From: Octopus sinensis | Taxonomy: Eukaryota | Assembly: GCF_006345805.1 (NCBI RefSeq) | Contig: NC_043006.1 | Location: forward strand, 15,872,001-15,936,000 | Reading direction: 5' to 3' | DNA: 64,000 nucleotides | In this document: piece after piece, positions 3,230 to 63,755 of the stretch | Layout of the letters: each line of letters starts with the position of its first letter | Numbering within the stretch: the stretch's first letter is position 1 | Made by a program: the position numbers and the translations under genes | The notes under the pieces: model-generated | Told to the model about the DNA's origin: nothing | The model's database searches: none | The model's input: only the letters and a program-made list of their open reading frames with translations

Positions 3230-3751
3230 ATTTATCAACGTATAACAAGAATTATATGTTTATAAAGTGAAGTAAAAGAAAATTCATAAAACTACTTTGC
3301 AGAACATAAAGAAATCGCCGCGGTTTAATTGGAGTCTAACCAAGAAGAATGAGGCTTTGGCAATTTCTCGCTGTCTTCCTTGGAAGCAGCTTTGTCCTGT
3401 CAACACCTCAACATGAATCACCCGATAAAAAAGCGTCGGTAAGTAAACGAATTTTTTTTTTATTTTACAATCAAATTCTTTGTTATTGTTGTCATCTTTA
3501 TCTTTTTCCCCCCACTTCTGATTCCTAAGTATTAACGATTTCTGCTATGCGCATATATATAATATATGTACATATATATATATGTATATATATAGATATA
3601 CATACATATATATGTATATATATATAGACCTATACATAATATATATGTATATATATAGATATATAGAGATAACATATATATATATGATAATATATAGATA
3701 TAATATCTATATAGGTATAACATATATTCTAAACACATTGTATATATACTA

Positions 3752-22000: not shown

Positions 22001-22469
22001 GGCTTATAATTACACTACATTTAATATTTGATGTAGTATCTGTTTCCGTGAATTTTGGCTAGCTTTAGCAGGGGCACTTGAATTATAACGGCGAATGCAA
22101 TCGACTGAACCACATGTGTGTTTATCGTTATGGTAAAACCTAGCATGCGGTTGAGTAAATTGTATTCTTGACAAATTCAGCTGAGGAGCTACAGATATGT
22201 TATGTGAGTAAAATTACATAATTTATTAATAGCGAAACAATTGTCCTGAATTAATCTGCATTTTTAAAATTTTTTACTTGCCCTACTCGTTTACGCTAAT
22301 AGGTGTGCTAACTTTCATCGGAAACAATTCTTCGTAGCTAAACCGTAGCAGATCTATTTTTAGTGCTAGAGTAGACCACATAGTGGTCACTCTCTTACAT
22401 TTACATATTTATATATATATATATATATATATATAACGTAATAATATGTGATATGATATATACATTTAT

Positions 22470-22805
22470 GTACATGATGGCTGCCCCCTCGTTATCGACT
22501 ATGGCCATTGCACGAAGCTTAACTGTTATTGGTGCTGTGATCGAATGTGACATTTTAGCCCAGCTAAAGATCTACAATGTCTTGTACAGAATTGGCAACT
22601 AAAACCTTTACCGGTAATAGCCGGCTGTAGTTGTAACTGGGCTTCATGTACCCTAGCATGTTGTTTACACTCTCTTCCACACACATTCCCAACAGATATG
22701 ATTAGTATGGTGTGTAACACCACCACCAGTGGCCAGGTTGTCACTTATCTGTCTCGCTTTATGACTACGAAGATGACTCATGAGTCCAGCTTTACTGAGG
22801 CATGT
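22470..22805 (-). mobile_element. RTE/BovB-like LINE 3' end with C2H2-like zinc fingers
   Basis: CLSKAGLMSHLRSH and CQFCTRHCRSLAGLKCHIRSQH, frameshifted and truncated by (TACA)n. Confidence 0.7.
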
Positions 22806-22921
22806 ATGTACATATATGTACATACATACATACATACATACATACATACATACATCATACATACACACACATACATACATACACACATACATACATACAT
22901 ACATACATACACACACATACA

Positions 22922-22953
<32 letters not shown>

Positions 22954-23051
22954 CATACATACATACATAAATACATTCATACATACATACATCCATACAC
23001 ACACACACACATACATACATACATACATACATACATACATACATACATACA

Positions 23052-23085
<34 letters not shown>

Positions 23086-23112
23086 CATACAAATATAAAT
23101 ATATACATACAT
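22805..23112. repeat. (TACA)n microsatellite
   Basis: Directly visible; representative of dozens of TA, CA, TACA and GATA tracts in the window. Confidence 0.95.
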
Positions 23113-24130
23113 ACTGTGTCATGTGCTAGGAATTGATTAATTCGTCTTGTCAGCGCATATTTTGCTATGCGAATTAATCCCATTAGTTTAGCTGGATCAT
23201 AGTTTGCTAGAAATGCTATAAAGAGGTATAGGCTACACTTTATTCTGTAAGCGTTGGGTAGCGATTCATTCATAGTTTTTCTGTCAGAGGTGTAACAAGA
23301 CCAGAAATTGCTCACAAAGAAAAATAACTTGCAGTGTGCCGCTTCCTTTATTGTTCACAGCGAGTCTGAAATTGTGAATTTACCAGAAATATAAGGCACA
23401 TCAAGCAATACACCTTAGCTCATCCACAAGTGCTGTGCATATCTCTCTGAATGTCAGCTGTCCAGTTCTGTCACTACCATGACAACTTATATACTTTTAA
23501 ATATGCTTCCTTATTAGCCACACAGGGCTGCACACAGACGGGACAGATTACAAAGTAGAGCTTTTCTTTTTAGGCGAGAAAAAAAGAAAAAGTGGGGTAG
23601 GTTTTCGATCAAAAGTGACCGTAAAAGGGAAAGAAGAAAAAAAAAGGAAAAGAAAAAGAAAAAAACACGATCAATAGGGATCGTGTATCACAGTGTCATG
23701 ATGTAAAGTGTAAAGGGGGTAATAGATAAGGTTTATCCGTGGAAAGAAAAACCTACGGAAAAGACCACGGTAACCTCGGTCAATAATGTTACATGTTACC
23801 ACATTTGTTTGCAAGTAGGTAACCCTCTGTTTTAAATTTTCTGGGTTCATAAGATTATGCTCAAAGTGGCTTCGTCATTCATACGTGCTATCCTTGCTAC
23901 ATTCATCCATCTTTTCTTGAAACATTCGCTAGACAAAACTTGCCTCTCTACTCTCACTTTCCTAAACTAACAAGGTTAGCTGAGAAGTAGTTTGCGTTCT
24001 CTGCGAGCTGTTACAGCTATTAATATAGTTGCGGACGAAGACTGGGCATTCTTAAACTCATTAGATTTCTTTATTTACATAATTACTTTGTTAATTCTAT
24101 ATATCACACAAGTACACTTACCCACTCACA

Positions 24131-28742: not shown

Positions 28743-30855
28743 TAGAATGTAATAAGGACTTACTTATTTGTAAAGGCAGTTGTTTGCAGATTGAGGCAGA
28801 TGGGGGCTATTATTTCTACCAGTTTGATCGATTATGTACACTCTTTCTTATATCAGCAGTTTTAGTGTAAATAAATTAGATAATATCACATTTCTTTGCA
28901 TCTCGAATGTATAACAAAAAGATGAATCTTTTTTTAGTTTAGAAGCAAAAATCTTATGAATATTTATTTCTTACAAAGCTTCAGTTTTAATGGGGTGAAT
29001 ATAATCAATTAACTTGTCTCTATCTCCAGTACTTCCTTTGTTCATATTTTATCAATCCTGGAAGATAAAATGGTAGATTCTGGCCAGATGACTTAAAACC
29101 AGAGCGTAAATCGTTGTAACTAAAATTCACAAAACATTTCTCCGACACGACATTGCTTTTGCCAATTTACCGTGATTATATTAATTAATATGAAATTCAA
29201 ACATTGACAAATTATTTCACATTTTGTAGATGTAATGTCAGTTTCATCGTGTTTGAAGATCACGAGAAAGAGCGGTGTACCCTCGAATGGCTGTGTAAAA
29301 CGATCCTTGACGCTACAGGGCTTTTCTCTCTGCTTGTGGTTCGTAGTTTTGAAGTGAGATTCAGTCCGTGCAATCTGTTCCCACCCTTTAGACTTGGAGA
29401 TCTAATCCCACTGGCTCAGTGATGTAAGACGACTGCGGTGGCTAGCAAACTATAGGTTTTACATTAGAGGACCTTCTCCGAGATGAAATTTCTTTCAGGT
29501 CGAGAGAGATTCACTTAACCTGGAGTTGCTGAGTGTCAAAGAGGCAACCAAATCACATGTGGGACTCTACCCATTGATTTGCTGCAATGTTTGGCTCACC
29601 TAGCCTTTTCCTTCCCCAAGGCTCTCAAAAAGCAGCAAAAGGTTTGTACTTGGATTTTCTTCCATAGTATGCTAACTAACCCGTTGCTGGGACTCTGACA
29701 CGCGCTACTGCTCCAGATCAGAGAAGACATAAAAATAATACATTCTAAGCGGTGGTTCCACACTACTCAAAACCTTGGTACTTTTGAACCAGGGCTCCAC
29801 AATTGGATGCAGTTTAAAGCCATACCCAGGAATGTATGAGATAACAGTTTATTAAACGGACAGAAATTCTTGAGAGGTTCTTATCTTATCTAAAAGACAG
29901 AATGAAAGGAATTAGGGTCTACAATGAGACAAACTCAGAACAAAGTGATGAAACTAAATACTGCAATACATTCGGGATGTGATGCAGTACTTGACAATCC
30001 TTGTATCATTTAATATGGAAAATAAAAATCGTATTTAACACAAGCATAGAAACACGTGCTCACTACACAGAACTTAATTTATTTGTAACTTACGGGTTCT
30101 TTGAGTAATGCATTCTTAATTCAATAATATAATTCCGTTCCTGTTAGAGGGTTGCATTTATTCATTTATTTATTTTCTTTTTATATGAAACCGACAAGCA
30201 GGCGTAGGCTCATACAAATTCTATCTACAAAATGGCTCCATTTTGAAATCTTAGCAACATTAAATCATATAGAGTGTAAGCATTCACAGGGAAAGATGCC
30301 TTACATACACTCAAGAAACTTTCCTTGTGTAAAAGAAAAATCATTAGAAGATTTTGAAAGTACACTACAATTGTTCTCCTAAGGTGCACATTGGATCGGG
30401 ATTCAAATTAGGAATTTCGTATAGTCTCCATGATTCTTCTGCAGCATCTCTATTACCAATTACTAATTCCCCACTTAAATATATTAAGCATCTAAATAAG
30501 TGCTTACTCAATAATTTTCAGTCGTCGTATAGGATGTTAAGGCATTAGGGAGAATAACATGAATAGATTCAAGAGATATCACTGCACAGGATTGGTAAAA
30601 TGTATTTCAGATGTAAATTATAAATGATGAATTTATGAAGAGTATGTTTATCTCAGGAAGCTGGCGCCAAACTTCCGCGCGCACCCACAAACACACACAC
30701 ACGTATATATGCATATCATATTTATTTCATATTATATTACGTCATATATTATATTTAGCCGAACCAGTCTCTCGCTATTCTGAAGTTTCTCCTGTGTTCA
30801 CAATAGTGTTAGGCCTGATCCAGGATAACAAGAGTGACTTTGCCAGGCTTTGATA

Positions 30856-31017
30856 GAGGTGCGGCTGTGTGGTAAGAAGTTTGCTTACCAACCATATGGC
30901 TCCGAATTCAGTACCACTGCGTGGCCCTTTCACTTTCGGCGAATGTCTTTTATCATAGCCTCGAGCCACCCAGAGTCTTGTGAATGGATTTGTTAGACGG
31001 AGAATGAAAGCTCGTCC

Positions 31018-31022
<5 letters not shown>
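30856..31022 (+). mobile_element. SINE family A, diverged 5' half
   Basis: Head similarity, then runs into a compound microsatellite. Confidence 0.7.
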
Positions 31023-31108
<86 letters not shown>

Positions 31109-31144
31109 ATGTATGTATGTATGTATATATAGAGAGAGAGAAAG

Positions 31145-31181
<37 letters not shown>

Positions 31182-31242
31182 CATACATACATACATACAT
31201 ACATACATACATACATACATACATACATACATACGTACATAC

Positions 31243-31332
<90 letters not shown>

Positions 31333-31552
31333 CTGTGTATGTGCGCCAATGTGTGCGTGTGTCCCTCACTACTGCTTGACTTATATATATACACCCAAAA
31401 AGTTTGTGTGTAGGACCTAAAGTGGCTGGTTGGTAGAGTCATGAGGACCTCAGTTAGATTACAGTAATCATTCTGTTAGCCTTCGTTCTGTGTTCAGATC
31501 TTGCTCAGGTCAGCTTTGCTGTCAATCTTTCCGTTGTCGATAAATAAAATAC

Positions 31553-31783
31553 CTATTTCTTTACTACCCACAAGGGGCTAAACACAGAGGGAGCAAACAA
31601 GGACAGACAAACGGATTAAGTCGATTATACCGACCCCAGCGCGTAACTGGTTCTTAATTTATCGACCCCGAAAGGATGAAAGGCAAAGTCGACCTCGGCG
31701 GAATTTGAACTCAGAACGTAACGGCAGACGAAATACGGCTACGCATTTCGCCCGGCGTGCTAACGTTTCTGCCAGCTCGCCGA
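31553..31783 (-). mobile_element. SINE family B, full length
   Basis: Reverse complement of 57811-58040. Confidence 0.9.
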
Positions 31784-32393
31784 TAAATAAAATACCATTC
31801 CTGTGCTGGTGTCGAGTCTTCTCTGTCTTCCTCTCATTTCCTGACTTTCTTCAAAAAGAAATCGACTTTGGTCAGATCTGAAAAGAGATGGGCTTGAGCA
31901 GGTCTAAAATATACGCAAAACATACCGAACATCGCTATGACACTCAGCAATAAAATTCCATTCCTGTTATAGGGTTGGTTTTATATATTTAACTACTTGA
32001 TTTCCTTTTTTCTTTTTGTATGAAACCGACAAAGACTCAATCAATGAGTGGAGGAACCCAAACAAAGACATTGTGCGTGTGAGTGTATGTGTGTGTACAT
32101 GTGTGTGTGTGTGTGTGTGTGTGTCTTTGAGTGTGTGTAGGCGTATATAAGAACGGGTGAATTTGTCTGTGTGCTAGTGCGCATGCCTACGTAGGCGTTT
32201 AGATTTGTTCAGCGAGACGATTTTCTCTGAACGATGAAGACGAACGAGGTGTTTTAATGGAATTTATTATATACACATACACACACATCTTTATGTATAT
32301 ATATAATATATATATATATATATATGCGTGTGCGTTGTCTACATATACATAGCTATGTAGGTAGACTAATTACTTCAACAACATATGCTTATG

Positions 32394-32445
<52 letters not shown>

Positions 32446-32466
32446 TATACATATATATATATATAT

Positions 32467-32514
<48 letters not shown>

Positions 32515-32515
32515 A

Positions 32516-32547
<32 letters not shown>

Positions 32548-32618
32548 CATATATACATATATACACATATATACATATACATATATACATATATATATAT
32601 ATACATATATATATATTA

Positions 32619-32697
32619 ATAGCACCAGGTGGTGCTATTAAGTTAGACATGGCCTGGGCTAATAATGGCCGAAACCTATCAAAGTATCAAAGTATAT
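32619..32697 (+). mobile_element. Short 5'-truncated copy of the same LINE 3' UTR
   Basis: CCAGGTGGTGCTATTAAGTTAGACATGGCCTGGG matches 9613-9650 and ends in a TCAAAGTA repeat. Confidence 0.6.
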
Positions 32698-32711
32698 ATA
32701 CACACACAGAC

Positions 32712-32766
<55 letters not shown>

Positions 32767-33230
32767 ATATATACATATACAGTATATGTTATTCGAGTAA
32801 TTAGCGTGTATGCAGATGGTTTACATAGCACAGCAAAATAACTGATGAATATAGAATTAGTTTATTGTCATTTAGAAGATATTACTCACTCTCCACATGC
32901 GCATTGATCTCACCCGTTGTCAGGTCAGTAACTAAGGGAAGCGACGAATTGGAGAACAAGCACACAACTAGAGTTGTTACGGGAAATATAAACCGGTAGA
33001 AATTTAAAGAAAAATGTAGACATGCGTGTATACATACACCGAAATGCACACACATATACACATGTTTGTAACACGAAAAGCGAAAAGTGAGAAGTGAGGG
33101 ATAGCTAGAGAGAAAGACAGATAGCTAACTACCTACATAGATCTCTGTCTCTCTCTGTCATTCTTTCTTTCTTTCTCTTTCAGTTTCTCTATCTTTCTCT
33201 CTTATTTTCTCTCTCTCCGGTCATTCATAC

Positions 33231-37807: not shown

Positions 37808-38190
37808 TAGTAGTAGTAGTAGCTGATACAGAAGCGATAATAGATGTATTTTAGTAGTAGTAATTTTGCAAGAATGGTGGTGGTGGTGGTGGTTTTGGTG
37901 GTGCTGGTGGTGCTGGTGTTGGTGGTGGTGGTTTGGTGCTGGTGCTGGTGGCGATGGTAGTTGTGGTGTTGATAGTGGTGGTAGTAATTATGCTAGTGAT
38001 GGTACATGTTGTGGTAGTACTGGTGGTAGCTATGATGCTGGCCGTAGTAGGAGTAGCAGCAGTAGAAGTAGCGCTGCTGGTTGAGATTATGGTAGGTTTG
38101 ATTGTAGTAGTGCTAGTGATGGTGCTGGAAGTAACAGCAGCAGCAGCAGTAGTAGTAGTAGTTAGTAGTAGTAGTAGTAGTAGTTTCACT
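37670..38190. repeat. Compound trinucleotide microsatellite (TAG/TGG/CAG)
   Basis: Directly visible. Confidence 0.95.
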
Positions 38191-38257
38191 AGTAGCTATA
38201 ATTAGCTAAATATTTCGATATACAACACAAATGGCGAGAGTTCGACGTGTATACATT

Positions 38258-38339: not shown

Positions 38340-38545
38340 GATATTAATAGTTATCGCCAAGCTACAATGGTAGTCCATAAATATAAGACTAAAGCTGTCG
38401 TTGATTAGCTCCAAGAGGCCATCGCCTCGAGCTAGCTATATGACACACGAACCTGTGTTCATTATAACCTTCGAACAGAGGAGGTCAGCCGCTTCCCCTT
38501 GCTGGTCAGACATCTGCAGACATGTTTCAGGGTATTTGCCCTTTA
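38340..38545 (-). mobile_element. Diverged, 5'-truncated copy of the 53962-54572 retrozyme-like family
   Basis: Minus strand reads AA-AGGG-CAAATA-CCCT-GAAA-CATG-TC-TGCAGATGTCTGAC...GCGGCTGACCTCC..TGTTCGAAGGTTATAA, colinear with 54008-54208. The 5' core is lost at a (TA)n tract. Confidence 0.8.
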
Positions 38546-38881
38546 TATATATATTTACACTCAGCTAAAACAGATACTTTTTCTTATACTGTTGCTAGTT
38601 AACACAAACCTTGAGTTGTGATGCACTGACTGACAACAATCAGGAGTTTCTAAACAGCTAGATCTCCATAACATATATTTATATATATATATAATATATA
38701 TATATATGTATGTATGTACGTATGTATGTATATGTATATATATATAAAAGAAGGTTGTAGCTCGCTTGAAGCATTGTAGTACAGATGTAGAAAAAGAAAA
38801 GGAAGATAAAGAACGCTGAGACAAAGCAGGAAGTCTTATACAGGCGCCAAGCCTATATACAGTTTGGATTAAGTATATATA

Positions 38882-38934
<53 letters not shown>

Positions 38935-38939
<5 letters not shown>

Positions 38940-39356
38940 TTTATGATGATATATTGAATTAGCGAAAGCAATGCTTTTTTATTAAAAAAGTAAATCTCTG
39001 TGACACATCCATTCACATGTAGCCAGGAGAGATATAATGTGTGAATATCTGTAGCAAGTGTGCACACTGCGTGGTATGTCACATGTCATCTTAGTGAGAT
39101 ATTTTTAATGAAATTGGGTAACACGCTTTCACCTATATTATGAATTAAATTGACTACGACATATCTAAATTGGAAATACTAAATCAAGGTCAACTTCTGA
39201 AGCGATATAGAAAAGAAATATTTATGGCGGTAGCAAATCCTACGTACAACATGTTCAGTTCCGAGAATTGCAACTCTCAGGCGGTGCAACAAAAAGAATA
39301 TAACCCTCTGTGAGCAGTATAAGGCTGTCTATGACCTGGAGTTAAATACGAAGTGT
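38935..39356 (+). repeat. ~420-bp direct repeat, copy 2
   Basis: Colinear with 34474-34897. Confidence 0.9.
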
Positions 39357-40214
39357 CCAGAACGGATGAATGTATGGAAAACAAAAAAAAAATATCTATA
39401 TAGATGTATCTATCTTTCGATGGTAAACGACCTCCTGCATGGATTCGACCTTCTTGTAGGAAATATACACAGTCATAACAAATATGCAGTGCACAAAATA
39501 CACTAAAATTTATCTTAAAGTGTTACTATTCACAAAAGTGTTTCTTTTTTAAGTTAGGAATAATTTAATCTATGACATTATGAAAGAATAAAGAGAAAGA
39601 AAGAAATTAACTTAAGATATACGATCACAGAGGACATTTACGTGATTTTACGTCATATAGTTTTCCGTATTGTTTCGATCACTGTATCTCTCATAAGGCG
39701 GTGTAAAACTATAGAACTTCTCTATAGCCAGTAGTATTACACTATCAGTCACGTAGAGTTTGATATAATACAGCTCGGAACGAATGAATGAACAGAAACG
39801 CAAAGTATTTTATTGGCAAGTTTCGAGGAAAAGTTATCTTGCATTCGTTAAGCTGGAATTAACTTCCTTAAAATCGGAAATAGGGTGCAAACAATGATAT
39901 TAGGTCCACTTCTACGAATTTTAGGTGCCCGATTCTCTTTGGGTATCTACTTCCGAAACACATTTATCTAATTACAATCTATGTGTGTATATGCTTATGA
40001 ACTATATATATGCACATTCATACACATTTATATTTATAAAGAGAGAGAGGAGAGCGAGAGAGAGAATAAGAGAGAAAGAGATGAGATAGAAGTACGATCG
40101 GTAGATAAAAGCTTTCAGCATATTCTGTAGTGTTTATGTATCCATTAATAGTTTTACTAATACAGATATGCATATGTATAGATACGCTCGTGTATAAATA
40201 GATGCACATATACA

Positions 40215-40278
<64 letters not shown>

Positions 40279-41578
40279 CATACATACATACATACATACA
40301 TACATACATACATACATACATGTGTGTATGAGTGTGTAAGACAAAGAGACACGCAGACAGAGGGAGGGAGATACGAACGTTATGAGAAAACAAAGAATAA
40401 GAAAATATTGAGAAAATATTCTGAGTGGACAATGGAATATATCGGTGTTAATTTTTTTCTTCTGCTTCAAGGCTACTAGAAAAGAAAATAGCTTTCACAA
40501 AAGATTTCAGTCATCTCAATGCTAAACACGTCCAATTTGCTATGATAAAATAACATTTTCTTACAAGTACATCGTTATCAAATTATTCTTTTAGGACTTA
40601 TATATGTTTAAATGTGCAGGCAGTAAGACTAACTCTTTGTTTAAAATACTAAACGAGAACTAGCATATAATTGCTGTCTTAGACTGGATTAACGAATCTC
40701 TATATTTTATTTGATAAGTATCAATATTTTTCATGTTTAATATAGAAGTATCCGGTAATCTTGTAATGTAAATATTATTTATTAATCGCAGGGAAGTTAA
40801 TATTTACTTGGAAATCTTGTTACAAACGGAGGCTTGCTAATAATCTCACTAATGCAAAGTACAGCTACTGGTTACAGAATCGATAGAATACTGGAGAAAC
40901 AACCCAAAGTTGGCTGATTCGTAGTTCATCGCCTGGATACAGCTTTCAGTTATATCCACGAGCAAGACACTTAACTGTCAGTTGTTAAATCTACGTACCT
41001 TTCAGTCGGTCCCGTATTTAATTTACCGATAGATTCACAGGCAAATATTGTAATACAGACCAATATTTCTTTGCTATGCATTAAAGAGTTCAGGTTCTTA
41101 TTGTGTCATGACAAGAAACATGTTAAAAGTTCCTCTTGGTTGAACTATATATACAAGTATGGACCACAAAGTAGTTGTTTATTTATGATAATTTTAATGA
41201 GTATGGAATTCTGTGTATGCATAAGATAAGGAAATCTATCAGATGTTTCATTGTAATTGCATCACGAAATGAAAGTGTCATTCAATGGCAATGTTATAGA
41301 GACGATATATGTCTGAATCGGATCTGTCGTTAATTTATATCATTTATCTTTCAATTGATTCAGTCATTGGATTGTGGCCATAGAGGCGCACCGACTTCAC
41401 AGTTTATGGAAGAATAGATCGAGCGCAGTATTCGTTATTCAAAGATGGTAGTTATTTTATCGGTCCTTAGCGGAATTATTAAGTTGTAGGGCGTAAAACA
41501 AGTTAGAACCGCTTGATATGCGTGATGTGGGTGACAAACACACCACACGCATGCATGCGCGCACATATTTGTACGCGC

Positions 41579-43554: not shown

Positions 43555-44374
43555 TAGATATTCTGTGATGTGATCTTTGCAGCGTGGGGTTGCGTATTGT
43601 CTTGATAAAACATCACTCCTTTCCGATCTACTAAAGCGGGTCTTTTTTCTTCAAAGCTTGGTTCAAACCCTCTAATTGCCGACAGTACACTTGAGCATTG
43701 ATTATTGCATTAGGTGATAATAATTCAAAGTGAATTACACCTTTGCAATCTCACCAGATAGAGAGAAGAATCTTTTCCCCATGAAGTTCCCTTCTCGATT
43801 GTGGTTGCGCTTTTTCCCTTTTACCAAGCCGCTGTTTAAAACGTTTAACATTTCGATAGAAAATCCGTTTTTCGTCACCAGTCACAAGTCTTTCCGAAAA
43901 GGGTGAAATGAATTCACGAGAATGGAGAGAAGATCAGATGTCAACTCAGGATTTGCGGTTGCTTTCGGACAATTCACGAGGCACCCATTTTCCAAGTTTA
44001 GAAACCTTTGAAAGTTCTTGAAGATGATGATGAACAGTTGTATGGTTTGATCTAAGGTTTATTGCCAATTCTTCAACTGATAATGCAGAATTTTCTTCAA
44101 GTAATGTCCCAAGGAGCTTATCATCAAACTTAACTGGACGTCCTGTTCGATCTTCATCTTTAATGCTGAAATCTCCACTTCTGAAGTCTGCAAACCATCT
44201 TCTGCAAGTTTTTTCATTCAAGCATTCTTTCCCAAAGGCTGAGTGTATGTTTCGAGTCCTTATAAACTGAGTGTATGTTTCGCGGCTACAGAGTTTCCTT
44301 TTTTGGTACTCATAAAGCATTATGTGCCTCAAATCCTCTTTAAATACTTCTATGTTAGAAAGTGTTTTGATCAA
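43555..44374 (-). pseudogene. Decayed mariner transposase, 3'-truncated before the third catalytic Asp
   Basis: HTH region CRRWFADFRSGDFSIKDEDRTGRP and GKWVPREL (WVPHEL). In-frame continuation past stops gives LVTGDEK, LHGEKILLSIW*D and FYQDNTQPH. There are three in-frame TGA stops. Confidence 0.92.
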
Positions 44375-45931: not shown

Positions 45932-46740
45932 TCATAGTGTCTTGCGTAGGATGTGGGCTGTTCCTAGCGGGGCTATTTTTTGGACAGTGTGTAGTGTTGA
46001 GGATCCAGATATAACTTCTATATTTTTGCTCATATGATTTTCTATCAACCCCCATGCTCCAGTTACCATTAGTATTGTTTTTACCACGTTTTGAATACAT
46101 CAATTTCGAAGCCTTTCTACTTCGACAATTTCTTCACTTCTTTTTTGACAATATTTTGATCAGAAGAAGGGACTGCAATGTCTATCAGTAAGCAGTTGTT
46201 TTTCCCCAATCCTTGACTATTATGTCTGGACGATTAACTTTTACTTCTTTGTCGGTTTGAACCGGTATATCCCAGATGTTTATGGCCTGACCGTTGTCTT
46301 GTATATTGCATGACACGTGCTTATACCATCTACTGTCAGTTTTGTTGTTGTAATTTTGATATATTGTCCAGTGGATATAACTGCTTACTTTGTCGCGTCT
46401 GTATACATATTCAGACTTGGCAAGGACTGGGCAGCTCAAGATGATGTGGTCAACTGTCTCATTGTACTGGCTGCACATTCTGCATTTGGTGTTGAGACTT
46501 GTTTTCATCATTTTGTTATTGTAATTGTTTATTGTCATGCATTGATCTTGTGCAGTGAGAATCATTCCTTCTGTTTCGGCTTTTAGTTCAGAGCTTTTGA
46601 GCCGTTCTTGGTTTTTACTTAGACTTACTTCTTCTCTGTCAAGCCTTGCAAGATATTGACTCTAGTGTCAGTTTTCATGTTGTTTTGGTATCTTTGACCA
46701 TTTCTGCTATGTTGTCACCTGTGTGTACAAAGTGGTGATT
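45932..46740 (-). mobile_element. R4/Dong-like retrotransposon, 3' fragment (second subfamily)
   Basis: LKAETEGMILTAQDQ, CCHC knuckle CRMC..ETVDHIILSC, NRPDIIV, LIDIAVP and QKIAPLGTAHILRKTL*, with stops. Confidence 0.9.
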
Positions 46741-51820: not shown

Positions 51821-52979
51821 CATTCCTCAATAATTACATATTGAAATATTAAATTCGAGGGTACTGGAATAATTGAACATATCTCTCCACCTAACGGTAT
51901 CAGACACATCATATTCAGTGTTAGTACCGCCGAATTCAAAATATGAATGAAGTTCATTTACCTTCCCCTGCTCATCCGCGTGTGTCTTCAAGTAAAATAC
52001 TACAGAAAAAAACTTCGGTATGAGGTAAAGCAAATCTTTGCTGAACCCTAATTATTAAGTATATATATATATATATATATATATATACTTTAAGTTCATC
52101 TATGGAAAACCATTTGAATATGCATATAAAATCTCCTTCTCTATTATGTGGGCTACAGCCTAGTGATGCTAACTGCTGATATCATGTAGTAATAATAGTA
52201 ATAATCATCCTTGGATGGAATTCATAAATATTTTAATGAATCACTACGACCGTTTCGACTAGTCATGTTTCGTAAAATCCTAACCCGTATTCCAAGAATG
52301 ATTGCAGTACAGTCCGTAGTAACCACAGATATCGAGTAGATCATGTTCGTGCATTCATTTCTTCGAGTGATATAGCATTAATGGATATTTAATTGTGGGT
52401 TACACATTTATGTGTAAACGCATATGTACATAGATATATCGATGTACATATGCGTAAGTATTCATTCATCCACATCATAAATATACATATACCTATGCGC
52501 GTAGACACGGGCACTGACACACGCGGGCAAACACGCACAGACACACACACACACATGCACATATATGCAAGTAGACATCAATAGAAATTTATGTATACTC
52601 ACATATGGATACAAACACATAAATCAGACACTTAAACATTTACACAACTAATTCAGCTCAAAGAGATGCATGTCTTGATTTTTTTTTCCTCCTTAACTCA
52701 ATATTTAATGAAAGCCGAATGCATTCGGTGATTTTGATACTATTGCTAAAGCCTTAATTACAGAAGTAACCCCAGAAAGGGGATTAGGCGCAATGTGTGT
52801 AGTGTTTATCTATTCATCTTCATGGTGGAGTTGTCACCAATATCGATAAGATGAAAAAAAAAAGCTAGTTCCCATTAAGAAACTACTGTAAACTTACTGT
52901 TTTGTAAAACAGCGATAATATCAATAAACATAAAATGTGATGGGGAAAATTATCACTGTAATTTTCTTACCTCGTTAAT

Positions 52980-53099
52980 TATTGATAACAACAACGATGA
53001 AAATGATGACGACGACAACGACGACAGTAGCAATGACAACAACAACAAAAACAATAACAACAACAACAACAATAACAATGATACTACTACTACTACTAC

Positions 53100-53144
<45 letters not shown>

Positions 53145-53209
53145 TAATAATAATAATAACAACAATAACAATGATAACAACAACAACAGCAACAACAACA
53201 ACAATAACA

Positions 53210-53256
<47 letters not shown>

Positions 53257-53283
53257 AATAATAATAATAATAAAAATAATAAT
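52980..53283. repeat. Compound trinucleotide microsatellite (AAC/AAT/ATG/TAC)
   Basis: Directly visible. Confidence 0.95.
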
Positions 53284-53291
53284 CATTTCTA

Positions 53292-53708
53292 CTATAGGCA
53301 CAAGGCCTTAAACTTTGTGGAAGTGGGTTAGTCGATTACATTGATCCTTGTGCTCCACTTGCACTTATTTCATCGATCCCGAAATAACGAAAGGCAAAGT
53401 CGACCTCGATGGCATTTGAACTCAGAACGTTAAAACGGACGAAATACCGCTAAACATTTTGCATGGCTTGCTAATTCTTATTTCTGTATTGCCCACAAGG
53501 GGCTAAACACAGAGGGGACAAACAAGGAAAGACAAACGGATTAAATCGATTGTATCGACCCCAGTGCGTAACTGGTACTTATTTAATCAACCCGAAAGGA
53601 TGAAAAGGCAAAGTCGACGTCGGCGGAATTTGAACTCAGAACGTAACGGCAGACGAAATACCGCTAAGCATTTCGCCCGGCGTGCTAACGTTTCTGCCAG
53701 CTCGCTGC
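53292..53708 (-). mobile_element. Two tandem SINE family B copies
   Basis: Reverse complements of both tail variants. Confidence 0.85.
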
Positions 53709-58711: not shown

Positions 58712-59133
58712 TCTATTTCTTTACTACCCACAAGGGGCTAAACACAGAGTGGACAAACAAGGACAGGCAAACGGATTAAGTCGATTATATCGACCCCAGT
58801 GCGTAACCGGTACTTATTTGATCGACCCCGATAGGATGAAAGGCAAAGTCGACCTCGGCGGAATTTGAACTCAGAACGTAAAGACAGACGAAATACCTAT
58901 TTCTAGTTCTTTACTACCCACAAGGGGCTAAACACAGAGGGGACAAACAAGGACAGTCAAACGGATTAAGTCGATTATATCGACCCCAGTGCGTAACTGG
59001 TACTTATTTAATCGACCCCGAAAGCATGACAGGCAAAGTCGACCTCGGCGGAATTTGAACTCAGAACCTAACGGCAGACGAAATACGGCTATGCATTTCG
59101 TCCGGCGTGCTACCGTTTCTGCCAGCTCGCCTC
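58712..59133 (-). mobile_element. Two tandem SINE family B copies
   Basis: Flanked by imperfect TSD-like AATATTTCTAATTA..ACAGTCT at about 58691 and 59138. Confidence 0.88.
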
Positions 59134-59629
59134 CTTTAATATTTCTAATTACCACAGTCTTGTTACTTTCGTATAATTTGAAGCCCTCAATCCGAGTGTG
59201 TAGGAATACAGGAGCATTTTCAAAATTGTTGTTACTGATATTATTGTAAACGTAGACCTTGATACAGAGAATGTCCGCCTGTAATTGCCTAATTTACTCA
59301 TAAGTAGTCAATTATCTCAGGCTGAAATTCGCATTGATTTAATGGTAACTTAATATACTTGTTTTCCAAATGTTTATTGCAGACATGTCTTTGAAAACTT
59401 GTCAATTCAATTTCTATACATATTAGAGGAAACACTATTAATCCATATCAGATAAGTACCTTATCTGGTTTAGAAAGGCACAAGCCAGCCAACATAATCA
59501 TTCCACTGGTTAAATATTTCGCTTTAACTAAGTAATTTTTCCCTCTTCAAATCAGTCTATCTAAATGATTTTTCTTATTATACATTCATAGATCTTTTTG
59601 TTTTGGCTCTTCGAATTGTCTATAATTCA

Positions 59630-59649
59630 ATATTCTTTTTTAATTGCAG
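59630..59649 (+). promoter_or_regulatory. 3' splice acceptor of the neuropeptide exon
   Basis: tattcttttttaattgcag|GAC: pyrimidine tract with AG at 59648-59649, phase 0 to the ORF. The track's TTG 'start' lies in the intron. Confidence 0.75.
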
Positions 59650-62600
59650 GACGAGAAGCGACAATCGATGGGTAAGGGACAGACAGAAGGTATGAAAAAT
59701 GATGAATTCGGTGTAGCCTATTTGAATTCCCACAGCAAACATATGAATAAAAGGCTTTCAGATTCCGTAAAATATTCACCAATTGGAATGCACGTGCTAC
59801 ATAGAAAAAGAAGCTTCGACACATTAGGTGGGGCATTTATGCCACCAGGGGGAAAAAGAAACTTCGACTCATTAGGTGGGGCATTTATGCCACCAGGTGG
59901 AAAAAGAAACTTCGACTCATTAGGTGGGGCATTTATGCCACCAGGGGGAAAAAGAAACTTCGACTCATTAGGTGGGGCATTTATGCCACCAGGTGGAAAA
60001 AGAAACTTCGACTCATTAGGTGGGGCATTTATGCCACCAGGGGGAAAAAGAAACTTCGACTCATTAGGTGGGGCATTTATGCCACCAGGGGGAAAAAGAA
60101 ACTTCGACTCATTAGGTGGGGCATTTATGCCACCAGGGGGAAAAAGAAACTTCGACTCATTAGGTGGGGCATTTATGCCAGGTGGAAAAAGAAACTTCGA
60201 TTCATTAGGTGGGGCATTTATGCCACCAGGTGGAAAAAGAAACTTCGACTCTTTAGGTGGAGCTTTTATGCCAGGTGGAAAAAGAAATTTCGATTCATTA
60301 GGTGGTGCATTTATGCCACCAGGGGGAAAAAGAAACTTCGACTCTTTAGGTGGAGCTTTTATGCCAGGTGGAAAAAGAAACTTCGATTCATTAGGTGGGG
60401 CATTTATGCCACCAGGTGGAAAAAGAAACTTCGACTCTTTAGGTGGAGCTTTTATGCCAGGTGGAAAAAGAAACTTCGATTCATTAGGTGGGGCATTTAT
60501 GCCACCAGGTGGAAAAAGAAACTTCGACTCTTTAGGTGGAGCTTTTATGCCACCAGGTGGAAAAAGAAACTTTGACTCATTAGGTGGGGCATTTATGCCA
60601 CCAGGTGGAAAAAGAAACTTCGACTCTTTAGGTGGTGCATTTATGCCAGGTGGAAAAAGAAACTTCGATTCATTAGGTGGTGCATTTATGCCAGGTGGAA
60701 AAAGAAACTTCGATTCATTAGGTGGTGCATTTATGCCAGGTGGAAAAAGAAACTTCGACTCATTAGGTGGGGCATTTATGCCACCAGGGGGAAAAAGAAA
60801 CTTCGACTCATTAGTGGGGCATTTATGCCACCAGGGGGAAAAAGAACTTCGACTCATTAGGTGGGGCATTTATGCCACCAGGGGGAAAAAGAAACTTCGA
60901 CTCATTAGGTGGGGCATTTATGCCACCAGGGGGAAAAAGAAACTTCGACTCATTAGGTGGGGCATTTATGCCAGGTGGAAAAAGAAACTTCGATTCATTA
61001 GTGGGGCATTTATGCCACCAGGTGGAAAAAGAAACTTCGACTCTTTAGGTGGAGCTTTTATGCCAGGTGGAAAAAGAAACTTCGATTCATTAGGTGGTGC
61101 ATTTATGCCACCAGGGGGAAAAAGAAACTTCGACTCTTTAGGTGGAGCTTTTATGCCAGGTGGAAAAAGAACTTCGATTCATTAGGTGGGGCATTATGCC
61201 ACCAGGTGAAAAAGAAACTTCGACTCTTTAGGTGGAGCTTTTATGCCACCAGGTGGAAAAAGAAACTTTGACTCATTAGGTGGGGCATTTATGCCACCAG
61301 GTGGAAAAAGAAACTTCGACTCTTTAGGTGGTGCATTTATGCCAGGTGGAAAAAGAAACTTCGATTCATTAGGTGGTGCATTTATGCCAGGTGGAAAAAG
61401 AAACTTCGATTCATTAGGTGGTGCATTTATGCCAGGTGGAAAAAGAAACTTCGACTCATTAGGTGGGGCATTTATGCCACCAGGGGGAAAAAGAAACTTC
61501 GACTCATTAGGTGGTGCATTTATGCCAGGTGGAAAAAGAAACTTCGACTCATTAGGTGGGGCATTTATGCCACCAGGGGGAAAAAGAAACTTCGACTCAT
61601 TAGGTGGGGCATTTATGCCACCAGGGGGAAAAAGAAACTTCGACTCATTAGGTGGGGCATTTATGCCACCAGGGGGAAAAAGAAACTTCGATTCATTAGG
61701 TGGGGCATTTATGCCACCAGGGGGAAAAAGAAACTTCGATTCATTAGGTGGTGCATTTATGCCACCAGGGGGAAAAAGAAACTTCGACTCATTAGGTGGG
61801 GCATTTATGCCAGGTGGAAAAAGAAACTTCGACTCATTGGGTGGTGCATTTATGCCAGGAGGAAAACGTACTTTCGATTCCTTGGGTGGAGGAATTTTAC
61901 CACTTCCGAGTGGTTGCTTGGGAAAACGTTCATGTCATTCCTTAAATGGAAGACGTCTATCTGCTGAGAGCAGTGCTGATTCATTGGATGATTCCGATGG
62001 AAAACGTTCATTTGATTCCTTAGGGGGTGCATTTATGCCAAGTGGAAAGCGTACTTTCGATTCCTTGGGTGGTGCTTTCATGCCAGTTGGAAAGAGGAAC
62101 TTTGACTCGTTAGGGGGTGCTTTTATGCCAGGTGGAAAACGTACTTTCGATTCCTTGGGTGGTGCTTTTATGCCAGGTGGAAAGAGAAACTTTGACTCTT
62201 TGGGCGGGGCTTTTATGCCAGGTGGTAAAAGAAACTTCGACTCGTTAGGTGGGGCATTTATGCCAGGTGGAAAACGTACTTTCGATTCGTTAGGTGGAGC
62301 ATTTATGCCAGGTGGAAAACGTACTTTCGATTCGTTAGGTGGAGCTTTTATGCCAGGTGGAAAACGTACTTTCGATTCATTAGGTGGAGCATTTATGCCA
62401 GGTGGAAAACGTACTTTCGATTCGTTAGGTGGAGCATTTATGCCAGGTGGAAAACGTACTTTCGATTCGTTAGGTGGAGCATTTATGCCAGGTGGAAAAC
62501 GTACTTTCGATTCCTTGGGTGGTGCTTTTATGCCAGGTGGAAAGAGGAACTTCGATTCGTTAGGTGGAGCTTTTATGCCTGGTGGAAAGAGACAATTTGA

Positions 62601-63132
62601 CACGCTAGAGGGAGGAATTTCTCCGCCTGGTGGAAAGAGACAATTTGACACGCTAGAGGGAGAAATTTCTCCGCCTGGTGGAAAGAGACAATTTGACACG
62701 CTAGAGGGAGAAATTTTTCCACCTGGTGGAAAGAGACAATTTGACACGCTAGAGGGAGAAATTTCTCCGCCTGGTGGAAAGAGACAATTTGACACGCTAG
62801 AGGGAGAAATTACTCCGCCTGGTGGAAAGAGACAATTTGACACGCTAGAGGGAGAAATTACTCCGCCTGGTGGAAAGAGACAATTTGACACGCTAGAGGG
62901 AGAAATTTCTCCGCCTGGTGGAAAGAGACATTTTGAATCGTTAGGAAAAGCATTTATACCGCGGAATGTTAAGAAACAATATGACATGGATAGTGACTGG
63001 AGACCATTTGACACGTTAGGTGGAGCATATATGCCTGATTATGGAAAGAGACAATCTGACTCGTTAAGTGGAGCGCTTTTAACAGAATCAGCTGAAAAAC
63101 AAGGTAGTGGTGATTCAGACCTGAAAAACTAA
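59650..63132 (+). CDS. Terminal coding exon of a multicopy neuropeptide precursor (FCAP / orcokinin-B / FLGamide-like; xFDSLGGAFMP(P)G-amide), interrupted by six 1-bp deletions
   Basis: Track ORFs 59644-61185 and 61243-63132 are in the same frame. About 65-70 units of 45/48 nt each end in G-K-R (amidation donor plus dibasic convertase site). Synonymous variation between units preserves the peptide. The exon starts right after a polypyrimidine tract and CAG (GAC GAG AAG CGA = DEKR); stop is TAA at 63130-63132. Family assignment rests on recall of the DSLGG motif. Confidence 0.92.
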
Positions 63133-63590
63133 AACAGCATTATCAATATATGTTGCCCTGTGGAATGGATTAACACAAAATAACTTAAGGAACAGTTGTT
63201 ATTTGCTATACTGTTTCGACGAAAATTGAAAACAAAGCCTTTCTTTTATTATCCCTTCAAGAGTAGAGGAAGTTTTCTCACAATCACATACACTTACTAC
63301 CAAATACATTCAGAACTTCGACTTCTGTTTTGATTTATTTACTGCTAATAATATCAACAGAAATGTAAAAGATCTACTCTTTCTAGAGATGTACTCTTAA
63401 TACATCTCTGATAACAATTCACAACAGCCACGTCTGAATCAGCGAGAGCATTGAAAGAAAACAGTACTGTGTTTTTGGCGTTCGATACCAGTAATGAAAG
63501 TTCGCGAAAGACTTTTGAAGTTTCTATCAATTTTTTTCCCAACACAGTTGCTTCATTTTCCTTCATGTCCTTATTTTTAAATTTTTTTCT

Positions 63591-63596
63591 AATAAA
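63591..63596 (+). promoter_or_regulatory. Candidate polyadenylation signal of the neuropeptide gene
   Basis: AATAAA about 460 nt after the stop codon. The AT-rich context makes chance occurrence possible. Confidence 0.35.

Positions 63597-63685: not shown

Positions 63686-63755
<70 letters not shown>

What the first reader, a model, noticed from the sequence alone, without database searches (positions are those of the whole stretch)
59650..63132. Giant neuropeptide precursor exon: about 65-70 Gly-amidated FDSLGGAFMP(P)G peptides in one ~1160-aa stretch
Seen: 44 N/S-FD(S/T)LGGAFMP(P)G-GKR units, a Cys-containing and acidic spacer, 13 more xFDSLGGAFMPx-GKR units, 7 acidic QFDTLEG units and divergent terminal peptides such as PFDTLGGAYMPDY-GKR. 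Known: G-K-R signals convertase cleavage and PAM amidation, giving NFDSLGGAFMPPG-NH2 and NFDSLGGAFMPG-NH2. From recall, the DSLGG core is shared with Aplysia FCAPs (non-amidated) and with orcokinin-B / cuttlefish FLGamide peptides. Inferred: a lineage-specific, extreme amplification with a distinct MP(P)G-amide C-terminus. Short-read assemblies would collapse it, so the true copy number may be unreported.
Basis: partly seen in the sequence, partly recalled or inferred. Interest (0 to 1): 0.78.

Follow-up and report, generated by a model that had tools for sequence, protein, structure and literature searches.

The report
Giant multi-copy FCAP-type neuropeptide precursor exon
This is the last, 3.5-kb coding exon of a mollusc (most likely octopus) gene of the known FCAP / FLGamide ("orcokinin B-like") neuropeptide family; it encodes about 66 amide-ended copies of one short peptide, more than published surveys report, but in this assembly six one-base deletions break the reading frame.

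Summary
The repeat array is real and coding. From a splice acceptor at 59648-59649 to a TAA at 63130-63132, one frame encodes 57 near-identical x-FDSLGGAFMP(P)x-G-KR units. It also encodes 7 QFDTLEGxIxPPG-G-KR units, a Cys-containing and acidic spacer, and divergent end peptides. Among the 26 distinct unit DNA variants, pS is 0.49 and pN is 0.035, so the peptide is under strong purifying selection in that frame.

Six single-base deletions, all in homopolymer runs and all inside the second copy of a ~700-bp internal duplication, create two shifted stretches and two in-frame stops (61183, 61207). Restoring six bases gives one 1162-aa ORF. I read them as long-read consensus errors, which is an inference.

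HMMER and BLASTP link the peptides to molluscan feeding-circuit-activating-peptide (FCAP) precursors. The best pairwise match is the aplacophoran Wirenia FCAP GFDSLGNSAFMPDKR (49-54% identity). The peptides also closely match the two published Sepia FLGamide epitopes.

So the family is known. What stands out is the copy number: 66 Gly-extended peptides, against 6-28 reported for molluscan FCAPs and 7-8 copies of the main peptide in Sepia. No orthologue, transcript or confirmed signal-peptide exon could be retrieved. A candidate signal-peptide exon lies at 3349-3438.

The parts
3349..3438 (+). Candidate first coding exon (signal peptide): MRLWQFLAVFLGSSFVLSTPQHESPDKKAS. It is followed by a GTAAGT donor in phase 0. 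TATAAA lies at about 3262 and a 100-N gap at 3130-3229. This is a candidate only.
   Evidence: It was the only hit of a signal-peptide plus strong-donor scan on the + strand (0 on the - strand). About 0.47 such hits are expected per shuffled strand, so it is not significant on its own. The phase matches the big exon.
59620..59649 (+). 3' splice site: polypyrimidine tract and AG acceptor (…ttcttttttaattgcAG|gac). An in-frame TAA lies at 59641-59643.
   Evidence: Only frame 1 stays open downstream, so the intron is phase 0.
59650..59811 (+). N-terminal pro-region of the exon: DEKR / QSMGKGQTEGMKNDEFGVAYLNSHSKHMN-KR / LSDSVKYSPIGMHVLH-RKR
59812..61869 (+). Block 1: 44 units of 45 or 48 bp. It holds 1 SFDTLGGAFMPPG-GKR unit, 27 NFDSLGGAFMPPG-GKR units and 16 NFDSLGGAFMPG-GKR units. 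It contains a ~700-bp higher-order duplication (unit types CCCDEFGFEFEHIJKKC and CCCDEFLFEHIJKKC).
60802..61218 (+). Frame-disrupted interval. Six 1-bp deletions in homopolymer runs: a base is missing after about 60814 (G), 60846 (A), 61001 (G), 61171 (A), 61195 (T) and 61208 (G). In-frame stops lie at 61183-61185 and 61207-61209.
   Evidence: All six deletions lie in the second higher-order copy. After correction that copy differs from the first by one substitution and one 93-bp unit pair.
61870..62007 (+). Divergent unit TFDSLGGGILPLPSGCL-GKR, followed by the Cys-containing and acidic spacer SCHSLNG-RR-LSAESSADSLDDSDG-KR
62008..62592 (+). Block 2: 13 more diverged 45-bp units. These are 7 TFDSLGGAFMPG, 4 NFDSLGGAFMPG, 1 SFDSLGGAFMPS and 1 TFDSLGGAFMPV, each followed by G-KR.
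62593..62928 (+). Block 3: 7 acidic 48-bp units, QFDTLEG(G/E)I(S/T/F)PPG-GKR
62929..63132 (+). Divergent C-terminal peptides (HFESLGKAFIPRNV-KK, QYDMDSDWRPFDTLGGAYMPDY-GKR and the QSDSLSGALLTESAEKQGSGDSDLKN tail) and the TAA stop
   Evidence: PFDTLGGAYMPDY resembles Sepia FLGa1 VFDTLGGGHVPYY.
63133..63596 (+). Putative 3' UTR up to an AATAAA polyadenylation signal at 63591-63596
   Evidence: This rests on the motif only.

Best explanation
Positions 59650-63132 (+) are the terminal coding exon of a neuropeptide preprohormone gene of the molluscan FCAP / cephalopod FLGamide ('orcokinin B-like') family. The organism is most likely an octopod.

Proposed processing (inferred from the established pathway):
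1. The precursor enters the secretory pathway through a signal peptide encoded on an upstream exon. The candidate is at 3349-3438, 56 kb upstream.
2. Prohormone convertases cut after each KR, RR or KK.
3. A carboxypeptidase removes the basic residues.
4. Peptidylglycine alpha-amidating monooxygenase converts the exposed C-terminal Gly into an amide.

Predicted yield from one translation event:
- 27 NFDSLGGAFMPPG-NH2
- 20 NFDSLGGAFMPG-NH2
- 7 TFDSLGGAFMPG-NH2
- 3 single variants of these
- 7 (pyro)QFDTLEGxIxPPG-NH2
- a few unique peptides

The array grew by tandem duplication of 45/48-bp units, of a 93-bp pair of units and of a ~700-bp higher-order block, while selection held the peptide sequence constant. 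The six 1-bp deletions that break the frame are most likely consensus errors of a long-read assembly inside a near-perfect internal duplication, so the real gene encodes one ~1190-aa precursor.

Shown here: the array, its frame, the selection signature, the cleavage and amidation motifs, and homology to FCAP precursors. Inferred: the processing, the signal-peptide exon, the error status of the deletions, expression, and function as a neuromodulator or hormone in feeding and reproduction, by analogy with Aplysia FCAP, Sepia FLGamide and octopus FCAP expression.
For: Coding frame:
- Among the 57 core units, variable nucleotide columns number 4, 2 and 14 at codon positions 1, 2 and 3.
- pS is 0.49 against pN 0.035. 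Within the FDSLGGAFMP core, pN is 0.003.
- The sense frame has the lowest pN/pS of the six frames.
- 66 units have Gly followed by a dibasic site.

Exon anatomy: an AG acceptor with an upstream in-frame stop; GC of 0.44 against about 0.35 in the flanks; AATAAA 460 nt after the stop.

Homology:
- An exhaustive HMMER search gave gastropod and bivalve FCAP-type precursors: P0004 Elysia 1e-40; P0005 Plakobranchus, annotated 'feeding circuit activating peptides', 6e-35; P0014 Lymnaea 1e-19.
- BLASTP gave 41% identity to P0005.
- BLASTP gave 49-54% identity, E = 1e-51, to the Wirenia argentea FCAP taken from the PMC6425005 supplement.
- Sepia FLGamide epitopes: FDSLGGGSFLG-amide has the same length, the same FDSLGG core and the same amidated Gly. 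VFDTLGGGHVPYY resembles the terminal PFDTLGGAYMPDY.

Deletions as errors:
- All six are losses of one base from a run of 2-3 identical bases.
- All six fall within 420 bp, inside the second copy of the internal duplication. That copy otherwise differs from the first by a single substitution and one unit pair.
- The 1.9 kb downstream of them is intact and still under selection.

Octopod origin: a 30-mer that I recalled from the abundant Octopus SINE occurs 13 times in the window, against 0 expected by chance.

Expression context from the literature: FCAP transcripts are reported in the octopus optic gland and peduncle complex and in the axial nerve cord.
Against: - No orthologue, transcript or protein containing these peptides was found. 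Searches of 5.8 billion clustered proteins and of their 1.84 billion representatives returned nothing closer than about 50% identity. No searchable paper contains the peptide sequence.
- The signal-peptide exon is only a candidate. About 0.47 such hits are expected by chance per strand.
- As assembled, the frame is broken. Nothing here proves that the deletions are artefacts, and the total of -6 restores the frame with a prior chance of only about 1 in 3.
- A squid single-cell study found an 'FCAP-like' transcript in epidermal clusters, so expression need not be purely neuronal.
- The taxon rests on a repeat recalled from memory and on peptide similarity.
Confidence: 0.75

Rival explanations
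1. The frameshifts are real. The locus is a recently disabled pseudogene, or an allele that makes a truncated ~510-aa product ending at 61185. That product would carry about 21 intact peptide copies, some out-of-frame sequence and a few more copies.
For: The deposited sequence contains six 1-bp deletions and two in-frame stops. No transcript or orthologue was available to contradict it.
Against: All six changes are homopolymer contractions clustered within 420 bp. The affected block differs from its sister copy by only one substitution, which is an unnatural ratio of indels to substitutions. The 1.9 kb downstream has no stop, no indel and a pN/pS of about 0.07.
Confidence: 0.12
2. The gene is real but the copy number is an assembly artefact. 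The second ~700-bp higher-order copy (60802-61497) could be a spurious duplication or a heterozygous insertion, or the array could be collapsed. The true number of units would then differ from 44 + 13 + 7.
For: The second copy is almost identical to the first and is the only place with consensus errors. Sepia transcripts differing by one peptide copy are reported, which is compatible with copy-number variation in this family.
Against: The copies are not identical: they differ by a 93-bp unit pair and one substitution. The array lies within one contig, with unique flanks on both sides. Even without the second copy, about 50 Gly-extended peptides remain.
Confidence: 0.2
3. The product is a secreted multi-copy peptide precursor used outside the nervous system, for example in epidermis, a gland or saliva, and is not a neuropeptide.
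For: A 'feeding circuit activating peptide-like' transcript marks epidermal clusters in Loligo vulgaris single-cell data. Sepia FLGamide immunoreactivity is seen in peripheral cells of the oviduct gland.
Against: Family members with tested function are neuronal or neurohormonal. Octopus FCAP in situ signal lies in brain lobes, the peduncle complex and the axial nerve cord. The dibasic and Gly-amide architecture is that of regulated-secretion prohormones.
Confidence: 0.08
4. It is a non-coding minisatellite whose open frames arise by chance, or the antisense ORFs (59718-60869 and 61935-63014) are the real product.
For: Long antisense ORFs exist, encoding a FLFPPGGINAPPNESK repeat.
Against: Variation is concentrated at sense third-codon positions (14 of 20 variable columns). 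Sense pN/pS is 0.05-0.08, against 0.25 for the open antisense frame and above 2 for the remaining frames that could be scored. The sense product is homologous to known precursors. The antisense product has no cleavage sites.
Confidence: 0.01

Closest known systems
Sepia officinalis FLGamide / So-orcokinin B precursors (Zatylny-Gaudin 2016; Endress et al. 2022, PMC9410093)
   Same: The core peptide has the same design. FDSLGGGSFLG-NH2 and FDSLGGAFMPG-NH2 both have 11 residues after the N-terminal residue, an identical FDSLGG and an amidated Gly. A second peptide type also corresponds: VFDTLGGGHVPYY against PFDTLGGAYMPDY. Both are multi-copy precursors with dibasic sites. The paper states that the octopus and Loligo proteins annotated as FCAP belong to this family.
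   Different: Sepia has 7-8 copies of the main peptide and six peptide types. This exon has 57 core copies plus 7 acidic QFDTLEG units that the Sepia text does not describe. The C-terminal half is AFMP(P)G here and GSFLG in Sepia.
Molluscan feeding-circuit-activating peptide (FCAP) precursors (Aplysia; Lottia; Patinopecten; aplacophorans and chitons in PMC6425005)
   Same: Tandem x(F/L)DSLGG... peptides of 11-13 residues between dibasic sites. HMMER and BLASTP similarity is significant. The aplacophoran units GFDSLGNSAFMPDKR and GFDTLGGSAFMPDKR share the AFMP motif. Chiton units HFDSLGGFAIHPGKR carry the same Gly-KR amidation signal.
   Different: Gastropod and bivalve FCAPs end in ...HGW, HGY or HGM with no Gly before KR, so they are not amidated. 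Reported copy numbers are 6-28 and 13-21 in the scallop, against 66-67 here. That survey's supplementary note S4 contains no 'Cephalopoda FCAP' heading.
Arthropod orcokinin B-type peptides (…FDSLGGG(M/L)IP…)
   Same: A shared xFDS(L/I)GGG core followed by a hydrophobic residue and Pro. Examples are the hits P0055, P0083, P0087 and P0141 (RFDSLGGGMIPPKKH), and P0009 from a leafhopper.
   Different: Those precursors carry 3-13 copies, are mostly not Gly-extended and have long spacers. Whether FCAP/FLGamide and orcokinin B are orthologous or only similar is disputed between PMC6425005 and PMC9410093.
High-copy cnidarian preprohormones (Antho-RFamide and others)
   Same: They use the same strategy of amplifying one amidated peptide by tandem repetition within one precursor.
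   Different: The peptides are unrelated. Reported maxima are 19-21 copies in typical examples, 38 in cloned precursors, and 'up to 50' in a hexacoral survey. N-terminal processing in cnidarians is not dibasic.

Membership tests
FCAP / cephalopod FLGamide (orcokinin B-like) neuropeptide precursor | Multiple tandem peptides of about 11-13 residues with an x(F/L)D(S/T)LGG core, each flanked by dibasic cleavage sites | tested here: met
   57 core units, 7 QFDTLEG units and 3 divergent units, all bounded by KR, RR or KK
FCAP / cephalopod FLGamide (orcokinin B-like) neuropeptide precursor | Significant sequence similarity to recognised family members | tested here: met
   P0005, annotated 'feeding circuit activating peptides [Plakobranchus ocellatus]': E = 6e-35, 41% identity. 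Wirenia argentea FCAP: 49-54% identity, E = 1e-51. Caveat: repeat-on-repeat alignments inflate scores, and several top hits (P0002, P0006, P0007, P0010) are unrelated repeat proteins.
FCAP / cephalopod FLGamide (orcokinin B-like) neuropeptide precursor | N-terminal signal peptide on the precursor | tested here: inconclusive
   The exon has none of its own. A candidate upstream exon at 3349-3438 has a classical signal-peptide layout, a GTAAGT donor and the matching phase, but about 0.47 such hits are expected by chance.
FCAP / cephalopod FLGamide (orcokinin B-like) neuropeptide precursor | Uninterrupted reading frame (a functional gene) | tested here: inconclusive
   The frame is broken by six 1-bp homopolymer deletions and is restored by six insertions. 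The pattern suggests assembly error, but no reads were available.
FCAP / cephalopod FLGamide (orcokinin B-like) neuropeptide precursor | Transcription in neurons or neuroendocrine tissue and detection of the mature peptides | not testable with these tools
   There is only indirect literature on octopus 'FCAP' probes. The identity of those probes with this locus was not verified.
Cephalopod FLGamide subgroup (amidated members) | C-terminal Gly before the dibasic site, giving an amidated peptide | tested here: met
   66 of 67 units end in G-KR. This tests the sequence signal only. The chemistry was not tested.
Arthropod orcokinin A / molluscan pedal peptide | NFDEIDR-type or PFDxI(x)xSxFxxF-type motif | tested here: not met
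   The units have DSLGGAFMP. Pedal-peptide-like hits (P0003, P0008: PFDRIGxSAFxSFGKR) align only through the FD..G....GKR periodicity.
Any Pfam-defined protein family | A Pfam-A match above the gathering score with a real domain hit | tested here: not met
   There was no family for 61858-63132. The only listed match for 59650-60801 (Pax7) has 0 stretches that pass on their own, so it is a repeat artefact.

The most novel reading that the evidence does not exclude
The copy number is real. An octopod lineage expanded the FCAP/FLGamide gene about eight-fold relative to cuttlefish, to some 66 amidated peptides in one exon. That would be the highest-copy neuropeptide precursor described for a bilaterian, and it may vary in copy number between haplotypes. 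It has escaped description because short-read assemblies and transcriptomes collapse the array.
Probability: 0.35. Interest if true: 0.55.

Novelty: new member of a known kind. Interest (0 to 1): 0.42.

Why it matters
The FCAP/FLGamide family is implicated in feeding arousal in Aplysia, in the egg-laying musculature in cuttlefish, and in the feeding-to-brooding switch of the octopus optic gland. A precursor that delivers about 66 amidated peptides per translation would be an extreme case of dosage amplification by tandem repetition. It would give exact peptide sequences and masses for mass spectrometry, antibodies and receptor de-orphanisation in octopus. It is also a concrete example of how highly repetitive neuropeptide exons are mis-polished or collapsed in genome assemblies, so that copy numbers in neuropeptidome surveys may be underestimates. 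The family, the processing logic and the likely roles are already known, so the advance is one of degree.

Tried and rejected
Searches for orthologues:
- The word-indexed protein search with the C-terminal 424 aa gave one hit, P0001.
- The same search with the exon's unique N-terminus gave nothing.
- A synthetic query combining the Sepia epitopes with units from this window gave only distant FCAP or orcokinin-like metagenome and transcriptome proteins.
- The exhaustive representative search gave family-level relatives only, mixed with unrelated repeat proteins.
- So I obtained no cephalopod orthologue, no transcript and no direct species identification.

Literature searches for the peptide strings FDSLGGAFMP and LGGAFMP found 0 papers. 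The Aplysia FCAP paper (PMC6757975) is not held. The Sepia precursor sequences exist only as figures.

Other negative results:
- Pfam gave nothing meaningful.
- There are no tRNA genes or Rfam families in the window.
- A six-frame motif scan found no second FCAP-like exon elsewhere in the window.
- A strict scan for a signal-peptide exon gave only low-complexity junk. The relaxed scan gave the single candidate at 3349-3438, which is not significant against shuffles.
- MAFFT misregistered the two higher-order copies by placing a 96-bp gap at the start. The unit-type string gives the correct register.

Readings rejected: the antisense ORFs as genes and a non-coding satellite.
Full report
**Observation**

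- Position 59650 follows a canonical 3' splice site (…ttcttttttaattgcAG|gac). An in-frame TAA at 59641-59643 closes the frame upstream, and the other two frames close within about 45 nt. The exon therefore starts at 59650 in phase 0.
- Frame 1 then reads a 54-aa pro-region, 44 units of 45 or 48 bp (59812-61869), a divergent unit with a Cys-containing and acidic spacer (61870-62007), and 13 more diverged 45-bp units (62008-62592).
- It continues with seven acidic QFDTLEG(G/E)I(S/T/F)PPG-GKR units (62593-62928), divergent terminal peptides, and a TAA at 63130-63132.
- Tandem Repeats Finder reports the array with periods 45, 48 and 93 and scores up to 3261. An AATAAA lies 460 nt after the stop.

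- The frame is not continuous. Units starting at 60802, 60989, 61129 and 61173 are 46, 47, 44 and 46 bp long, where 45 or 48 bp is expected.
- Six single bases are missing, each from a run of two or three identical bases (ttaGGtgg, agAAAc, caTTTa, agGTGGa).
- This gives two out-of-frame stretches (60799-61032 and 61162-61215) and two in-frame stops (TAG 61183-61185, TGA 61207-61209).
- The mechanical ORFs are 59644-61185 and 61243-63132. Re-inserting the six bases gives a single 1162-aa ORF.

**Is it coding, and in which frame?**

- I aligned the 57 core units codon by codon. Fourteen of the 16 codon positions carry synonymous variants. Examples are GAC/GAT, TCA/TCT/TCC/TCG, GGG/GGA/GGT, GCA/GCT and AGA/CGT/AGG.
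- Amino-acid changes are confined to the first residue (N/T/S), one S-to-T change, and two units at the pre-amide position (G to S or V).
- Over the 26 distinct unit sequences, pS is 0.49 and pN is 0.035. In the FDSLGGAFMP core, pN is 0.003. Variable nucleotide columns number 4, 2 and 14 at codon positions 1, 2 and 3.
- The sense frame has the lowest pN/pS of the six frames: 0.08 for the 45-bp units and 0.05 for the 48-bp units. The long antisense ORFs (FLFPPGGINAPPNESK repeats) score 0.25, have no cleavage sites, and are by-products of the array.
- The array is therefore a protein-coding exon under strong purifying selection on the peptide sequence. It is not a neutral minisatellite.

**Predicted products**

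I cleaved the corrected ORF at dibasic sites and treated a terminal Gly as an amide donor. This gives:

| Copies | Peptide |
|---|---|
| 27 | NFDSLGGAFMPPG-NH2 |
| 20 | NFDSLGGAFMPG-NH2 |
| 7 | TFDSLGGAFMPG-NH2 |
| 1 each | SFDTLGGAFMPPG-NH2, SFDSLGGAFMPS-NH2, TFDSLGGAFMPV-NH2 |
| 7 | QFDTLEGxIxPPG-NH2 (N-terminal Gln may cyclise) |
| 1 | TFDSLGGGILPLPSGCL-NH2 |
| 1 | HFESLGKAFIPRNV |
| 1 | QYDMDSDWRPFDTLGGAYMPDY-NH2 |
| 1 | 26-aa tail |

That is 67 units of the family type, 66 of them Gly-extended. The processing steps are convertase cleavage, carboxypeptidase trimming and PAM amidation. They are inferred from the established prohormone pathway and were not tested. Expected masses are given.

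**Array architecture and the frameshifts**

- Coding each distinct unit sequence as a letter gives ABCBCCCDEFGFEFEHIJKKC | CCCDEFLFEHIJKKC | MCCCNLDO, followed by 13 more diverged units.
- Units 22-36 are therefore a second copy of a ~700-bp higher-order block (units 5-21). After correction the second copy differs from the first by one substitution and one missing 93-bp unit pair.
- All six deletions lie in the first 420 bp of this second copy.
- The case for consensus error rests on three points. Six homopolymer contractions stand against one substitution. The 1.0 kb of array upstream has no such lesion. The 1.9 kb downstream is intact and constrained.
- This is the expected signature of long-read consensus errors in a stretch where short-read polishing cannot place reads uniquely. 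The stretch may also be a heterozygous insertion with half the coverage. The pattern does not look like natural decay. The window also carries a fixed 100-N scaffold gap at 3130-3229, so it comes from a scaffolded assembly.
- This remains an inference. I estimate about 0.8 for artefact and about 0.12 for a real disrupted allele. The copy number itself could also be mis-assembled.

**Family assignment**

- Pfam has no model for this family.
- The exhaustive HMMER search of 1.84 billion representatives gave 197 hits at E ≤ 1e-3. Some top hits are unrelated repeat proteins (P0002, P0006, P0007, P0010).
- The consistent relatives are multi-copy precursors built on x(L/F)DSLGG. They include P0004 (Elysia, 1e-40), P0005 (Plakobranchus ocellatus, annotated 'feeding circuit activating peptides', 6e-35) and P0014 (Lymnaea, 1e-19). 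They also include the bivalve-type P0001, P0011 and P0019, and orcokinin-B-like …RFDSLGGGMIPPKKH proteins.
- BLASTP to P0005 gives 41% identity, unit on unit.
- The molluscan survey PMC6425005 lists FCAP precursors in its supplement. The aplacophoran ones (Wirenia argentea, Gymnomenia pellucida) read GFDSLGNSAFMPDKR and GFDTLGGSAFMPDKR, so they share the AFMP motif. Chiton ones read HFDSLGGFAIHPGKR, so they carry the Gly-KR amidation signal. BLASTP of the Wirenia precursor against 61858-63132 gives 49-54% identity, E = 1e-51, the best pairwise match I obtained.
- The only paper in the library containing 'FDSLGG' in its text is the Sepia officinalis FLGamide / 'So-orcokinin B' study (PMC9410093). 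Its antibody epitopes are FDSLGGGSFLG-amide and VFDTLGGGHVPYY.
  - The first epitope has the same length, the same FDSLGG and the same amidated Gly as FDSLGGAFMPG-NH2.
  - The second corresponds to the terminal PFDTLGGAYMPDY.
  - That paper reports 7-8 copies of the main peptide and mass-spectrometric detection in the CNS, genital tract and haemolymph. It also states that the Octopus bimaculoides (XP_014768639.1) and Loligo proteins annotated as FCAP belong to the same family.
- The exon is therefore a member of the FCAP / FLGamide family. Whether that family is 'orcokinin B' is a naming dispute between PMC6425005 and PMC9410093, and I cannot settle it.

**Surroundings**

- No other FCAP-like coding segment exists in the window.
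- The exon lacks a signal peptide. A scan of the 59.6 kb upstream found one candidate at 3349-3438: ATG, then MRLWQFLAVFLGSSFVLSTPQHESPDKKAS.
  - It has a basic n-region, a 15-residue hydrophobic core and a small-residue c-region. A GTAAGT donor follows in phase 0. A TATAAA lies about 85 bp upstream, and the ATG context is aagaATGa.
  - The same scan finds 0 candidates on the minus strand and about 0.47 per shuffled strand. It is a reasonable candidate and not a demonstrated exon.
  - If it is right, the intron is 56 kb and is filled with repeats.
- The rest of the window is AT-rich (about 35% GC, against 44% in the exon). It is dense in microsatellites and carries a Mos1-type transposase remnant and a reverse-transcriptase zinc-finger remnant.
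- A 30-mer that I recalled from the abundant Octopus SINE occurs 13 times, against 0 expected. The match in the window is a tool result. The attribution of the element to Octopus is from memory. Together with the Sepia-like peptides, this makes an octopod the most likely source.

**Function**

Function is inferred by analogy only.

- FCAP was isolated from the Aplysia cerebral-buccal connective and is tied to feeding motor programmes (as summarised in PMC5996578).
- Sepia FLGamides modulate oviduct and nidamental-gland contraction and circulate in haemolymph.
- FCAP transcripts label the peduncle complex and the axial nerve cord.
- A squid single-cell atlas found an FCAP-like transcript in epidermal clusters, so peripheral expression is possible.

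**Novelty**

- The family, the processing logic and an octopus 'FCAP' gene are all known. The precursor architecture is not described in anything I could search.
- Published copy numbers are 6-28 for molluscan FCAPs, 13-21 in the scallop and 7-8 for the main peptide in Sepia. A cnidarian review 'very high', and a hexacoral survey reports up to 50. Sixty-six would exceed all of these.
- I could not check whether a gene model for this locus already exists in a public octopus annotation. No protein containing these peptides was found in the 5.8-billion-cluster collection, which does hold other molluscan RefSeq and GenBank proteins.
- I therefore file it as a new member of a known kind, notable for its copy number and of moderate interest.

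Noticed in passing
window 3130-3229: There is a fixed 100-N scaffold gap only about 120 bp upstream of the candidate signal-peptide exon. Any promoter sequence beyond about 3230 is missing or not contiguous.
   Followed up: partly
window 58712-59086; also 36719/36909/37098, 42252/42435, 53399/53613: A SINE-like element (30-mer GTCGACCTCGGCGGAATTTGAACTCAGAAC) has 13 copies against 0 expected by chance. It repeatedly occurs as head-to-tail dimers or trimers with a period of about 190 bp, one of them directly upstream of the big exon. I recalled the motif from Octopus genomes.
   Followed up: partly
window 43946-44374 (-) and 46185-46565 (-): These are transposon remnants inside the putative 56-kb intron. 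One is a Mos1/mariner transposase HTH domain (Pfam HTH_48, E = 1.3e-12). The other is a reverse-transcriptase zinc-binding domain (zf-RVT, E = 4.6e-6).
   Followed up: partly
window 59718-60869 (-) and 61935-63014 (-): Long antisense ORFs run across the array (383 and 359 aa; FLFPPGGINAPPNESK repeats). They have no cleavage sites and weaker codon constraint than the sense frame, so they are by-products of the repeat.
   Followed up: yes
window 2200-4100, 8100-12300, 16800-18700, 21600-23300, 30700-32800, 38500-40500, 63687-63751: Microsatellites are very dense ((TA)n, (TATG)n/(CATA)n, (CA)n). They produce many spurious YIYIYI and CMYVCMYV ORFs, and (TA)32 lies in the putative 3' flank. Trinucleotide repeat tracts at 37851-38205 and 52975-53311 give low-complexity ORFs on both strands.
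   Followed up: no
window 59650-60801 (protein): Pfam lists 'Pax7' (PF12360) at E = 5.7e-7 with zero individually significant stretches. The score is a sum over the repeats and is not a real domain. It shows how such arrays could attract wrong automatic names.
   Followed up: yes
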